The position numbers were made by a program, and so were the translations under genes. A stretch of DNA of 64,000 bases from Camelus ferus (Eukaryota): the NCBI RefSeq assembly GCF_009834535.1, contig NC_045699.1:68572001-68636000 (forward strand). The letters run 5' to 3'. Positions 40,574 to 44,100 of this stretch are shown one piece after another; within the stretch, counting starts at the first letter, position 1; each line of letters begins with the position of its first letter. The notes beneath the pieces were generated by a model that did no database searches, was not told the origin of the DNA, and worked only from the letters and a program-made list of their open reading frames with translations.

Positions 40574-41039
40574 GCCTGAAACCCGCCGCCCCGGCTGGCA
40601 AAAAAGAGGAAACCAGACGGAAGTGCTATATGGTCCCGCCCCCAAACATGGTCCTTCCAATGGGTACCGCCATGTTTCGCAGCCGGAAGAGGTTCGCGTC
40701 GTATGGTGCTCGGGGAAAACGTACTGCGGAGAAGGAAGTAGGGTCCGGCGCTGAGCCTCAAAGCTAGCGGGGCTTACTTGGAGACAGATTTTGGGGTAAG
40801 GTGAAATGGAGAGAGTTTATATCCGTGGAAGTAGGTGGCAGAAAGGTCACCTGGGTTTCCTAACACTTAGTGATAGGGACCTTTCCTGTCCGTGCCACTC
40901 CTTTACCCCCCAAAAGCCCTACTCATTGCAGTAGAGATCGAGTCTTTTTGACTTCTCCGGCGCGCCGTCTCCGGAGAAGTTTAGCGTGTGGACCTCGCCA
41001 TGCCCATCCTCCCGCGGACGTCTGACAATGTCCGCTGCC

Positions 41040-41109
41040 ATGGCGACGCTGCTGCGCCGGTCCCTGCGCCCCCTCCGCGCGTTCAGAGGCCACCCCCGGC
41101 CTGCTGCAG
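41040..41109 (+). CDS. COQ4: COQ4 exon 1 (mitochondrial presequence-like; GC donor)
   Basis: gccATGg; [23 protein letters not shown], Arg-rich with no acidic residues; donor CAG|gcaagt. Confidence 0.93.
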
Positions 41110-44100
41110 GCAAGTGGCGGAAACGGGAAGGAGTGCTGGGGGCCCGTCTGCTCCTTTGACCGCAGTCTTTTCTTGCCCCGCAGATGTGCCCCTCCGAGCC
41201 ACGAGCCATGGCGCCGGCCTGCTCTACCCCGAACACATCCCCACCTCCCTGGTGCAGAAGGCCCTGCTTGCCGCTGGCTCTGCGGGAATGGCGCTGTACG
41301 ACCCGTATCGCCACGGTAAGGCCGCTTGCGCCCGGCGCTCCCTTAGGGCATATAGAGGTGGGGGCGTGCCCTTGCTTTGGAAGCCCGAGGAGGTCCCGGC
41401 CACTGCCAAAGCCTCCGTTTCTTATGGGTAACTGGAGGCTAGACTAGGCCAGGGTACCCAAACCTGGCTGCACCTTATAATGACTCGCAACATTCATAAA
41501 AATGAAGACACCTGGGTCCCACCCTAAACTTACTCAATTCTAATCTGTCGGGAATGGGGAGCGGGGGGAGGGGGGAGGAAGGGGCGGGGAATCTGAGCTG
41601 CCTTTTTAAACTGCTTCCCGGTAGAGCCTGTCATCCAATCACACTGAGAACCTCTGGACTAAATAGATGACTTACGAGCACCCATCAAATTATAACATCC
41701 AGTTTGAAATTAAACTTTATGAGGTCAGGGACCATGACTGCCCTGTTCTACTGTAGTGGTAATGTTTTAGATATTGCATGGCACATTAATAAATGCTCGA
41801 TAAATGCTGAGTGTTTAAATAGAACATTCTAGGATCCTACAATGCTTTTCTCATCTCCTCTAGGATTCTTAAGTCTGGAAAGTACTATTACCCCTACTAA
41901 TAAAAACTATAATGCTAACTGATCACTGAGTCCTTGTTTTGGTTGCTCACTGTGCTAAGTTTTATATGCATGATGTTCTTGATTTTTCACGTTAACCTTA
42001 TAAGAAAGGCGTTATCTGCACTTCACAAATTAGGACACTGAGAGTTGGAAATGTGAAGCAGTTTGCACAAGGTCACCTACATAGTGACTGTGCCTGGGCT
42101 CAAATCCAGCATTCTTTGATGCCAAAGCCTACACCTATCCATGGAGACGCGATATTCTATCGTGATAATGGATGTTAAAGTGATTTATAAACTAGAGTAC
42201 TGTGCTAACCAGAGCCACCTCACCCCATTAGATTAATAATGTTAATAACTATAGGTATATCAAGCTTTACTGTGTGCCAGGTGATTCACTGTTTAACTTT
42301 AATCCTCATAACTAAGAATTAGATATTCTGTTTTTATCACATAGGAAATTAAGGCTCAGACTACATCAGGTAACTTACCTAAGATCATATTCTCCATTTG
42401 TCCCCATTTCTTTCCTTTCAGACATGGTTGCAGTTCTAGGGGAGACCACAGGATACCGTACCCTGAAGGTCCTCAGGGACCAGATGAGGAGGGATCCAGA
42501 GGGTGCCCAAATCCTGCAGTAGGTCCCAGCTCTGCCCGGGGGGTTGGGGGCGTTCTCCTGGGATTCTGATCTCACTGGAGTCACACTGTGTTCCTCTAGG
42601 GAGCTCCTCTTGATACCCTATGGATGGTTGCACAGGCTGGGCACTGCCCAACACCATGGGCGCCATTCATGTGGACACTGATGACCCCTGGGTAGTGCAG
42701 TATGGTGACCTAAGCCCAGTTCCAGCAACAAGACTGCCTTCTCTAAGGTCCCATAACACATGCTACCTGTAACCCCCAAGTCTGCAATGCCTTTGTGAAC
42801 ACCCTGGTCACATCTGAGGCCTGCCTACCTAGATTGTGCCCCTGCAAGCAGGAATCATCACCTTAGTTTGTGGTAGTCCCTGCCACCTGCCTGGCCAGTA
42901 GGAAGTGCTCCATTATGACTTGTGGCCCCATTGCTGCTCTCTGCCCCTTCATCTGTCACGCCCTTGTTCTAGCTGGACCTTTCACCTGCCTTTGCTGGTG
43001 CCTTCGCAACTCCTGAGTCCTGCTTTCTGCCTCTCAGGGAGCGTCCCCGCATCTCACTGGCCACCCTCGACCTGGGCAAGCTCCGGAGTCTGCCTGAGGA
43101 CTCCTTTGGCCGCGAGTATCTCCGTTTCCTGGATGTGAATGTGAGTTTCCAGCTTCTGTGCACTTGGCAGTCATCAGGAAGGGCAGAGGAATGATACAGG
43201 AGTACTGTCTTGAGGAAGGAAGAGCCTGAGCTGCCACCATGGGCAAGAGTGCCTTGCAGTCTCTTGTACCAAGGCTTTGTCGTTTTTCTGTGGGACAGGC
43301 AAGCAGGCCAGGAACATCGCTCCAGGCAATAAAACTGGCCAGCATTTATTAACCTCTTACTGCATGCCAGATGCCAGGCTCATACATGATTTCACCAAAT
43401 TGTCCCAACAACCTGGTCAAATATGTTGTATTATTATCCCCTTTTAATAAATGAGGAAACTGAGGCTCAGAACAGTTAAGCAATTTGCTGATTTCACAAG
43501 CCAGTAATAATGGAGGCAGTATTCAAATTCAGGTCACATTCTTAACTGCTGTATTGTGTCTCCTGGTTCTAGAAACAGCCTTTTCTAGACAAGTTGTGGC
43601 ACTCTCCAACCCTAGGCAGGAAAGACAGTCGCTGAGGGACGGAGTCCCAACTACTGAGGGCCTCACTCATTTGTTCAGAATTGGCCATGTGCCATCCATT
43701 ATTCCAAGTGCTAGGGATATAATGGTGAACTAGACAGACAAGGTCCTGCCTTCATGGAGCTAGTATTATGTCTTAACAAAAGAGAGCAATAAAAGAAAAA
43801 AAAAGTCACAAAAAATTTTCATACTTAGAACATGAGACACTGTCCCCAGCAACTGGGACTTAAACCAGCAAAGAGCGTGCCCTTGTGGAGCTTCTGTTGT
43901 AGCAGATGGTGCCGTGAGGACAGCAGTCAGTGTGACAGAGGACTGGGGTGGGGTGGGTGGATGGACCAGGAAGCCACTTCTAATGGGGTGGTCATGGGAG
44001 GCCCTGCTGAGGAGATTTGGAAGATGAGGAGGAGCCAGCCCTGAAGAGAGATGGGGGGAGCATTCCCAGTAGAGGAACTGACTCTTTGTGTTTAAGAAAA

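What the first reader, a model, noticed from the sequence alone, without database searches (positions are those of the whole stretch)
41000..41315. COQ4 frame switch: an upstream AUG becomes in frame only when the GC-AG intron 1 is retained
Seen: an ATG at 41000 (gccATGc) lies 40 nt upstream of the COQ4 ATG, so it is out of frame in spliced mRNA. Intron 1 is 74 nt with a GC donor. If it is retained, the main frame stops at TGA 41157-41159 after 39 aa. The upstream frame instead runs 184 nt without a stop and enters exon 2 in the correct phase ([69 protein letters not shown]...). That gives a 303-aa COQ4 whose Pro-rich 61-aa leader replaces the Arg-rich presequence. Inference: one splicing decision could toggle between mitochondrial COQ4 and a non-mitochondrial isoform. 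From memory, human COQ4 has a presequence-less isoform starting at an exon-2 Met; here that codon is GTG, so this could be an alternative route. Caveat: frame coincidence is 1 in 3 and GC-rich DNA is poor in stops.
Basis: partly seen in the sequence, partly recalled or inferred. Interest (0 to 1): 0.8.

Follow-up and report, generated by a model that had tools for sequence, protein, structure and literature searches.

The report
Camel COQ4 upstream AUG, chance frame match
The camel COQ4 gene has a camel-only upstream start codon that would read in frame into the protein if the tiny first intron stayed in the RNA, but comparison with other mammals shows this is most likely a harmless coincidence next to an ordinary, conserved intron.

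Summary
There is an ATG at 41000, 40 nt upstream of the COQ4 ATG at 41040. Intron 1 (41110-41183) is 74 nt with a GC donor. If it is kept, the main frame stops at TGA 41157-41159. The upstream frame is then open into exon 2, giving a 303-aa ORF.

The functional reading is not backed by the comparisons:
- The GC-AG mini-intron is the normal intron 1 of mammalian COQ4. It is present in pig, beluga, donkey, deer, bear and baboon, and as GT-AG in vole.
- It is spliced in pig mRNA contigs and in RefSeq dromedary isoforms.
- Its length is 73-103 nt, with every residue class mod 3, so the frame relation is not conserved.
- The ATG at 41000 is found only in Camelus. Every other species has a GC box there.
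- Openness of the frame is expected: 47% of dinucleotide shuffles stay open, and 4 of 8 lineages are open past the main ATG.

RNA evidence is indirect because the single read-laying run was lost to a filter. Nine RNA runs hold the exons without intron words and seven hold intron words.

The surer effect of the uAUG is a 132-codon overlapping uORF on spliced mRNA. The 303-aa product is a possible minor by-product. The overall verdict is that the feature is ordinary.

The parts
41000..41002 (+). Upstream ATG (-40), frame +1 relative to the COQ4 CDS. -3 is G and +4 is C. Found only in Camelus.
   Evidence: The alignment shows a GC box (GCCCCGCCCATCC) at this place in pig, beluga, donkey, deer, baboon and vole. 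It is identical in Camelus ferus L001.
41028..41030 (+). Second upstream ATG (-12), in frame with the main ATG, adding MSAA. Absent from the other mammals aligned.
   Evidence: RefSeq dromedary isoform X3 (P0295) starts MSAAMATLL.
41040..41109 (+). COQ4 exon 1, coding part (70 nt): the Arg-rich mitochondrial presequence [23 protein letters not shown].
   Evidence: Orthologues have the same 70-nt exon.
41110..41183 (+). Intron 1, 74 nt, GC-AG: donor CAG|GCAAGT, branch-like CTTTGAC, pyrimidine tract, CAG acceptor.
   Evidence: The junction PAA|DVPLR is present in RefSeq isoforms P0293 and P0295. The homologous pig intron is spliced in mRNA contigs L003-L005.
41157..41159 (+). TGA that ends the main frame after 39 codons if intron 1 is kept.
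41184..41315 (+). COQ4 exon 2 (132 nt), [10 protein letters not shown]...DPYRH.
42422..42518 (+). COQ4 exon 3 (97 nt). Skipping it would also bring the 41000 frame back into the COQ4 frame.
43038..43140 (+). COQ4 exon 4.
47748..47877 (+). COQ4 exon 5.
48475..48568 (+). COQ4 exon 6.
49087..49258 (+). COQ4 exon 7, with stop TAG at 49256-49258.
40463..40573 (-). TRUB2 exon 1 coding part (MASAGLARLHGLFAVYKPPG...), head to head with COQ4. The two ATGs are 466 bp apart.
   Evidence: A TruB_N gene is called upstream on the minus strand in every orthologous locus.

Best explanation
The region 41000-41315 is the normal 5' end of camel COQ4. A 70-nt first coding exon carries the mitochondrial presequence. 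It is followed by a short GC-AG intron 1 that is conserved across the placental mammals sampled, and then by exon 2. The intron is normally removed, giving the canonical 265-aa protein, or 269 aa from the ATG at 41028.

In the Camelus lineage, substitutions in a conserved promoter or 5'UTR GC box created an AUG at -40. On spliced mRNA this AUG opens a 132-codon out-of-frame uORF overlapping the COQ4 start, which should lower canonical translation (inferred). On the minority of RNAs that keep intron 1, 40 + 74 = 114 nt happens to put this AUG in frame with exon 2. A 303-aa COQ4 with a Pro-rich, non-presequence-like leader could then be made.

This frame match is best read as a neutral, lineage-specific coincidence, not an evolved localisation switch.
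For: Sequence and gene model.

The intron and its GC donor are conserved. It is 74 nt in camel, 76 in pig, 103 in beluga, 75 in donkey, 85 in deer, 73 in bear and 87 in baboon, and 80 nt with a GT donor in vole. Length mod 3 is not conserved.

Pig mRNA contigs L003-L005 show the exact junction GCTGCAG|ATGTGCCC. RefSeq dromedary isoforms P0293 and P0295 carry PAA|DVPLR. The human 7-exon numbering fits the same structure (PMC11699292).

The uATG is absent from all eight other genome loci and lies on a conserved GC box. None of those loci has an upstream-ATG ORF reaching exon 2.

The frame is open by chance in 47% of shuffles, and open past the main ATG in 4 of 8 lineages. ORFs called on contigs from other mammals (P0285, P0286, P0291, P0297) read the same way through the intron.

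RNA runs: X3, X7, X8 and X9-X14 hold the flanking exons (shares 0.61-0.75 of 40900-41400). None of them holds any of the 7 intron-overlapping words. By my own arithmetic, a share of 0.61 equals the 0.60 expected for a spliced mRNA reaching at least 40900, so the uAUG is probably transcribed. X1, X2, X5, X6, X25 and X26 hold all intron words and X4 holds 4 of the 7.

L014, an RNA contig from another mammal, keeps intron 1 while introns 2 and 3 are spliced.

Leader composition: net charge 0 in the first 20 residues, 13 Pro and 3 acidic residues, against +6 for the canonical presequence.
Against: Retention level, TSS positions and strand are therefore unmeasured.

Contigs have no direction, and TRUB2-side antisense RNA could inflate the apparent 5'UTR.

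New World camelids could not be fetched, so the age of the uAUG is known only as within or before Camelus and after the split from other artiodactyls.

The uAUG is fixed in every Camelus sequence seen (L001, L015-L018). That is compatible with neutrality but does not prove it.
Confidence: 0.8

Rival explanations
1. One reading: intron-1 retention is a regulated switch. In camels it yields a functional non-mitochondrial 303-aa COQ4 from the upstream AUG, alongside the mitochondrial 265-aa form.
For: The frame arithmetic and open frame are real. The uAUG is first in line with a purine at -3. Intron words occur in seven RNA-like runs whose shares of about 0.73-0.79 fit intron 1 present and intron 2 absent. 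GC-AG first introns are weak, short and prone to alternative splicing (PMC7242645). A human isoform lacking the first 24 residues has been reported (cited in PMC11699292).
Against: The AUG is not conserved outside Camelus, and intron length mod 3 varies. Chance expectation is about 0.16. The same open frame occurs in other mammals. Met25 is seen only in primates among the species sampled, so camels did not lose an ancestral route. No 303-aa protein is in the 5.8-billion-protein collection. The confirmed RNA-Seq runs lack intron words.
Confidence: 0.06
2. The 41000 ATG is not part of most COQ4 mRNAs because the TSS lies downstream. It would then be plain promoter sequence with no translational consequence.
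For: It lies on what is a GC box in other mammals, inside a bidirectional TRUB2-COQ4 CpG island. Contig evidence is unstranded.
Against: Six RNA runs hold 0.61 of the words of 40900-41400. That needs coverage of nearly all of 40900-41109; a TSS at 41000 would give about 0.39 (own arithmetic). Pig mRNA contigs have 5'UTRs of 209-382 nt, and L014 has about 400 nt, all running through the homologous place. RefSeq isoform X3 starts at 41028.
Confidence: 0.12
3. Assembly or annotation artefact: the 74 nt or the ATG is a sequencing error in this assembly.
For: The first exon is GC-rich. The GenBank C. ferus model EPY83291.1 avoided exon 1.
Against: The C. ferus genomic locus L001 and four independent Logan contigs L015-L018 carry 100% of the 31-mers of 40900-41400. 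The homologous intron is present in eight other genomes.
Confidence: 0.01

Closest known systems
Mammalian COQ4 intron 1 (the human 7-exon gene; exon 1 = c.1-70 and exon 2 = c.71-202 by inference)
   Same: Same position after codon 23 plus 1 nt. Same CAG|GCAAGT GC donor and same short length class (73-103 nt) in pig, beluga, donkey, deer, bear and baboon. It is spliced to give PAA|DVPLR.
   Different: Nothing structural. The camel length, 74 nt, is simply one of several values.
Overlapping upstream ORFs (out-of-frame uAUG ahead of the main start)
   Same: An AUG 40 nt upstream, out of frame, in adequate context, whose ORF runs 132 codons past the main AUG on spliced mRNA.
   Different: It is lineage-specific. 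Neither translation nor a repressive effect was measured here.
Human COQ4 isoform lacking the first 24 residues (Casarin et al. 2008, as cited in PMC11699292)
   Same: It would also yield COQ4 without the N-terminal presequence.
   Different: The human form starts at Met25 in exon 2. That codon is Val in camel and in all non-primate species sampled. The camel route would need a uAUG plus intron retention and adds a 61-aa foreign leader. The human isoform itself is said to be absent from databases.
GC-AG first introns as weak, alternatively spliced introns (PMC7242645)
   Same: First intron, short, GC donor with otherwise consensus positions, conserved across mammals.
   Different: That paper links GC-AG introns mainly to alternative 5' splice sites. 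Retention here is only indirectly indicated.

Membership tests
U2-type GC-AG intron | GC at intron positions +1 and +2, with near-consensus flanking donor bases (CAG|GCAAGT) | tested here: met
   41107-41115 reads CAG|GCAAGT. The same donor is found in six other mammals.
U2-type GC-AG intron | Pyrimidine tract and AG acceptor, with a branch-like site upstream | tested here: met
   CTTTGAC ... TCTTTTCTTGCCCCGCAG|AT.
U2-type GC-AG intron | Actually removed from mRNA | tested here: met
   RefSeq dromedary isoforms carry the spliced junction. Pig mRNA contigs show the junction. Nine camel RNA runs hold the exon words but none of the intron words.
COQ4 (Pfam PF05019) | Full-length similarity to COQ4 orthologues and the Coq4 domain | tested here: met
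   The seven exons give 265 aa, colinear with pig, whale, bear and horse COQ4. P0293, P0295 and P0109 match the window's exon 2 at 100% and carry PF05019.
Overlapping uORF | AUG lies inside the transcribed 5'UTR | tested here: inconclusive
   K-mer shares of 0.61 fit coverage from at least 40900. Pig and L014 contigs run through the homologous place. Contigs are unstranded and no TSS data were available.
Overlapping uORF | Out of frame with the main CDS and ending downstream of the main AUG | tested here: met
   It is 40 nt upstream, and the ORF is 132 codons on spliced mRNA.
Dual-localisation isoform pair made by regulated intron retention | Retained-intron mRNA that is otherwise spliced and present in cytoplasmic or polysomal RNA | tested here: inconclusive
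   Seven RNA-like runs hold intron words, with shares that fit absence of intron 2. A contig from another mammal shows intron 1 kept with introns 2 and 3 spliced. There is no compartment or read-level data.
Dual-localisation isoform pair made by regulated intron retention | Conservation of the alternative start and reading frame among related species | tested here: not met
   The ATG is absent from eight other loci. Intron length mod 3 is 2, 1, 1, 0, 1, 1, 0, 2. Only Camelus species share the ATG. New World camelids were not obtainable.
Dual-localisation isoform pair made by regulated intron retention | Translation of the alternative N-terminus and a distinct localisation | not testable with these tools
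   This needs Ribo-seq, mass spectrometry and GFP fusions. Only leader composition was computed.

The most novel reading that the evidence does not exclude
In Camelus, a newly arisen AUG at -40 together with retention of the conserved GC-AG intron 1 produces a stable extramitochondrial COQ4 isoform with a physiological role, for example supporting non-mitochondrial CoQ pools. The splicing choice at this 74-nt intron would set the ratio of the two isoforms.
Probability: 0.05. Interest if true: 0.5.

Novelty: new member of a known kind. Interest (0 to 1): 0.15.

Why it matters
It matters little as it stands. The work shows that an attractive frame-switch story rests on a conserved, already annotated GC-AG intron plus a lineage-specific upstream AUG, and that the frame match is within chance.

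Two points are modestly useful. Camel COQ4 mRNA probably carries an overlapping uORF that other mammals lack, which could lower translation of an essential CoQ-biosynthesis protein. The mini-intron also explains why the early Camelus ferus annotation mis-modelled the first exon.

If the 303-aa form were shown to be made and to work outside mitochondria, it would be an example of a new N-terminal isoform born from one small promoter mutation.

Tried and rejected
1. Intron gain in camelids. This was my first idea, from a wrong recollection that human exon 1 spans c.1-202. It was rejected. Pig, beluga, donkey, deer, bear, baboon and vole all have the intron, and the human exon numbering in PMC11699292 fits 7 exons with c.203 starting exon 3.

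There is therefore no read-level junction, retention or TSS data.

3. Searches for a database protein with the MPILPR leader found none. Camel Logan RNA-derived COQ4 proteins are largely missing from the collection, so the absence is weak evidence.

4. Goat isoform P0118 was not on record. Green monkey P0135 turned out to be an intronless retrocopy, useless for the intron.

5. An Rfam scan of 40500-41700 found nothing meaningful.

6. A codon-position test on exon 1 across six species gave 15, 8 and 8 variable sites. It is uninformative for a fast-evolving presequence.

7. The Casarin 2008 paper (PMC4345104) is not held, so the human isoform is cited second-hand.

8. New World camelid sequence could not be reached with the available collections.

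Full report
**Observation**

The window carries COQ4 on the + strand, head to head with TRUB2. The TRUB2 ATG is at 40573 on the minus strand, 466 bp from the COQ4 ATG.
- ATG at 41000, context ctcgccATGc.
- Main ATG at 41040, context gctgccATGg.
- A 74-nt intron at 41110-41183 with donor CAG|GCAAGT and acceptor ...TCTTTTCTTGCCCCGCAG|AT.
- A main-frame TGA at 41157-41159 if the intron is kept.
- An uninterrupted frame from 41000 into exon 2.

Seven exons give a 265-aa protein: 41040-41109, 41184-41315, 42422-42518, 43038-43140, 47748-47877, 48475-48568 and 49087-49258. The 41000 frame with intron 1 kept gives 303 aa.

An ATG at 41028 is in frame with the main start and adds MSAA. On spliced mRNA the 41000 AUG opens a 132-codon overlapping out-of-frame uORF.

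**What the intron is**

I first suspected a camelid intron gain, because the spliced protein has exactly the length of human COQ4 and I recalled human exon 1 as c.1-202. That recollection was wrong.

The pig genomic locus L002 aligns colinearly with 40706-41400, including the intron. Three pig mRNA contigs (L003-L005) that encode the exact pig protein skip it, with junction GCTGCAG|ATGTGCCC.

Mapping orthologous proteins on their genomic loci gives the following for intron 1:

| Species | Intron 1 length (nt) | Donor |
|---|---|---|
| camel | 74 | CAG\|GCAAGT |
| pig | 76 | CAG\|GCAAGT |
| beluga | 103 | CAG\|GCAAGT |
| donkey | 75 | CAG\|GCAAGT |
| fallow deer | 85 | CAG\|GCAAGC |
| brown bear | 73 | CAG\|GCAAGT |
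| baboon | 87 | CAG\|GCAAGT |
| prairie vole | 80 | GT donor |

The human literature numbers seven exons, with exon 3 starting at Asp68 and c.532+6 lying in intron 5 (PMC11699292). This fits the same structure.

RefSeq dromedary isoforms X4 (P0293, starting MATLLRR...) and X3 (P0295, starting MSAAMATLL...) both carry the spliced junction PAA|DVPLR. The GC-AG mini-intron is therefore the ordinary, conserved and already annotated intron 1 of COQ4. GC-AG introns are known to be enriched among first introns, short, weak, often conserved and prone to alternative splicing (PMC7242645).

**Is the frame coincidence more than chance?**

Intron length mod 3 across the loci is 2, 1, 1, 0, 1, 1, 0, 2. No constraint keeps any upstream frame compatible with exon 2.

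In the alignment of the 5' region, the camel ATG at 41000 lies where pig, beluga, donkey, deer, baboon and vole have a GC box (GCCCCGCCCATCC or a close variant). The ATG at 41028 is also camel-only. None of the eight other loci has an upstream ATG whose ORF reaches exon 2.

Going backwards from exon 2, the frame stays open through the intron and past the main ATG in camel, pig, donkey and deer. It falls 2 nt short in beluga. Of 5000 dinucleotide-preserving shuffles of 41003-41183, 47% have no stop in the frame. With 1/3 for the phase, the configuration has a chance of about 0.16 once an upstream ATG exists.

ORFs that a prokaryote-style gene caller made on unspliced contigs from other mammals (P0285, P0286, P0291, P0297) read through the intron into exon 2 in the same way. 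P0285 aligns without gaps to the camel ORF from RCHGD onwards. Another predicted isoform, P0008, uses the same alternative exon-1 frame. In camel, skipping the 97-nt exon 3 would also restore the frame from 41000. Open alternative frames are simply cheap in this 70% GC stretch.

**Conservation within camels**

The Camelus ferus locus L001 is identical over 40900-41400, with one difference at 40885. Four Logan contigs (L015-L018) from other runs hold 100% of the 31-mers of 40900-41400. Runs labelled with three organism codes hold the stretch.

The ATG is thus present in every Camelus sequence seen. New World camelids could not be reached.

**RNA evidence**

Only k-mer shares are available.

For 40900-41400 there are 471 possible 31-mers. 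A spliced mRNA that reaches 40900 or further holds 282 of them, or 0.60 (my arithmetic). Six runs (X9-X14) show 0.61. The confirmed RNA-Seq runs X3, X7 and X8 show 0.67-0.75. None of these nine runs holds any of the 7 sampled words of 41095-41198, all of which overlap the intron.

This fits efficient splicing and a 5'UTR reaching at least about 140 nt upstream of the main ATG, which includes the uAUG. Pig contigs with 5'UTRs of 209-382 nt and contig L014 agree. Contigs are unstranded, however, and divergent transcription could contribute.

Six RNA-like runs (X1, X2, X5, X6, X25, X26) hold all intron words and X4 holds 4 of 7. For the five of these runs that were also listed for 40900-41400 (X1, X2, X4, X5, X6), shares are 0.73-0.79. 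These are close to the 0.82 expected for exons plus intron 1 without intron 2, which hints at genuine intron-1 retention.

L014, from another mammal, is an RNA contig that keeps intron 1 (also a GC donor) while introns 2 and 3 are precisely spliced. Some retention is therefore likely and is probably a general property of this weak mini-intron.

**Likely working**

Shown:
- The intron is conserved and is spliced.
- The uAUG is new in camels.
- The frame arithmetic is correct.

Inferred:
- On the dominant spliced mRNA, the -40 AUG (G at -3) captures part of the scanning ribosomes into a 132-codon overlapping uORF. COQ4 is then made by leaky scanning from 41028 and 41040.
- On intron-retaining RNA, the main frame ends after 39 codons. 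This is a premature stop far upstream of later junctions, so the RNA is a likely NMD substrate.
- Ribosomes starting at -40 on that RNA would make a 303-aa protein.
- Its 61-aa leader has net charge 0 in the first 20 residues, 13 prolines and 3 acidic residues. The canonical presequence has +6. It would probably import poorly.

Nothing indicates that selection maintains this product.

**Comparison with the human isoform**

[quoted passage not shown] Pig, whale, horse, bear, deer, vole and camel all have Val. Camels have not lost an ancestral route that would need replacing.

**Verdict**

The functional toggle is unsupported and is best explained by chance. The case is a new, minor instance of known phenomena: a lineage-specific uAUG or overlapping uORF next to a conserved GC-AG first intron. 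Interest is low.

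Noticed in passing
L010:1501-2298: In the green monkey assembly (GCA_047675955.1), the 265-aa COQ4 protein P0135 is encoded by an intronless 798-nt ORF. It lies inside a gene with an MCLC (CLCC1-like) domain on the opposite strand. This is a processed COQ4 retrocopy with an intact reading frame.
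   Followed up: no
window 40940-40999: A conserved promoter or 5'UTR block, TTGACTTCTCCGGCGCGCCGTC, is shared by camel, pig, donkey and deer. In camel it forms an inverted repeat, CTTCTCCGG...CCGGAGAAG (ETS-like cores). A GC box follows, which camels turned into the ATG at 41000.
   Followed up: partly
window 41000-41315 plus 43038-49258: Skipping the 97-nt exon 3 (42422-42518) also brings the 41000 frame back into the COQ4 frame, giving a 246-aa ORF. A predicted isoform from another mammal (P0008, 285 aa) has just this architecture. Exon-3 skipping is a known minor human COQ4 splice form (PMC11699292).
   Followed up: partly
window about 40660-40722, and L001: The GenBank Camelus ferus model EPY83291.1 (P0109, 272 aa) replaces the true first exon by an upstream piece (MFRSRKRFASYGARGKH...) joined to VPLRATS. 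It also has a wrong exon further on. This is a mis-annotation, probably caused by the GC-AG mini-intron.
   Followed up: partly
L007 (donkey), intron 1: In donkey, intron 1 is 75 nt and has no stop in the main frame. Retention there would insert 25 residues in frame into the presequence instead of truncating it.
   Followed up: no
L002:1-2464: The pig annotation has a 423-aa TruB_N (TRUB2) gene model whose range runs to 2464 on the minus strand, across the COQ4 start at 2001. Antisense overlap of the two 5' ends may therefore exist, and it limits what unstranded contigs can say about the COQ4 5'UTR.
   Followed up: no
window 40786, 40810, 40881, 40885: Single-base differences occur just upstream of the invariant 40900-41400 stretch. 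Camel contigs L015-L017 share A>C, A>G and C>A at the first three sites, and C. ferus has C>T at 40885.
   Followed up: no
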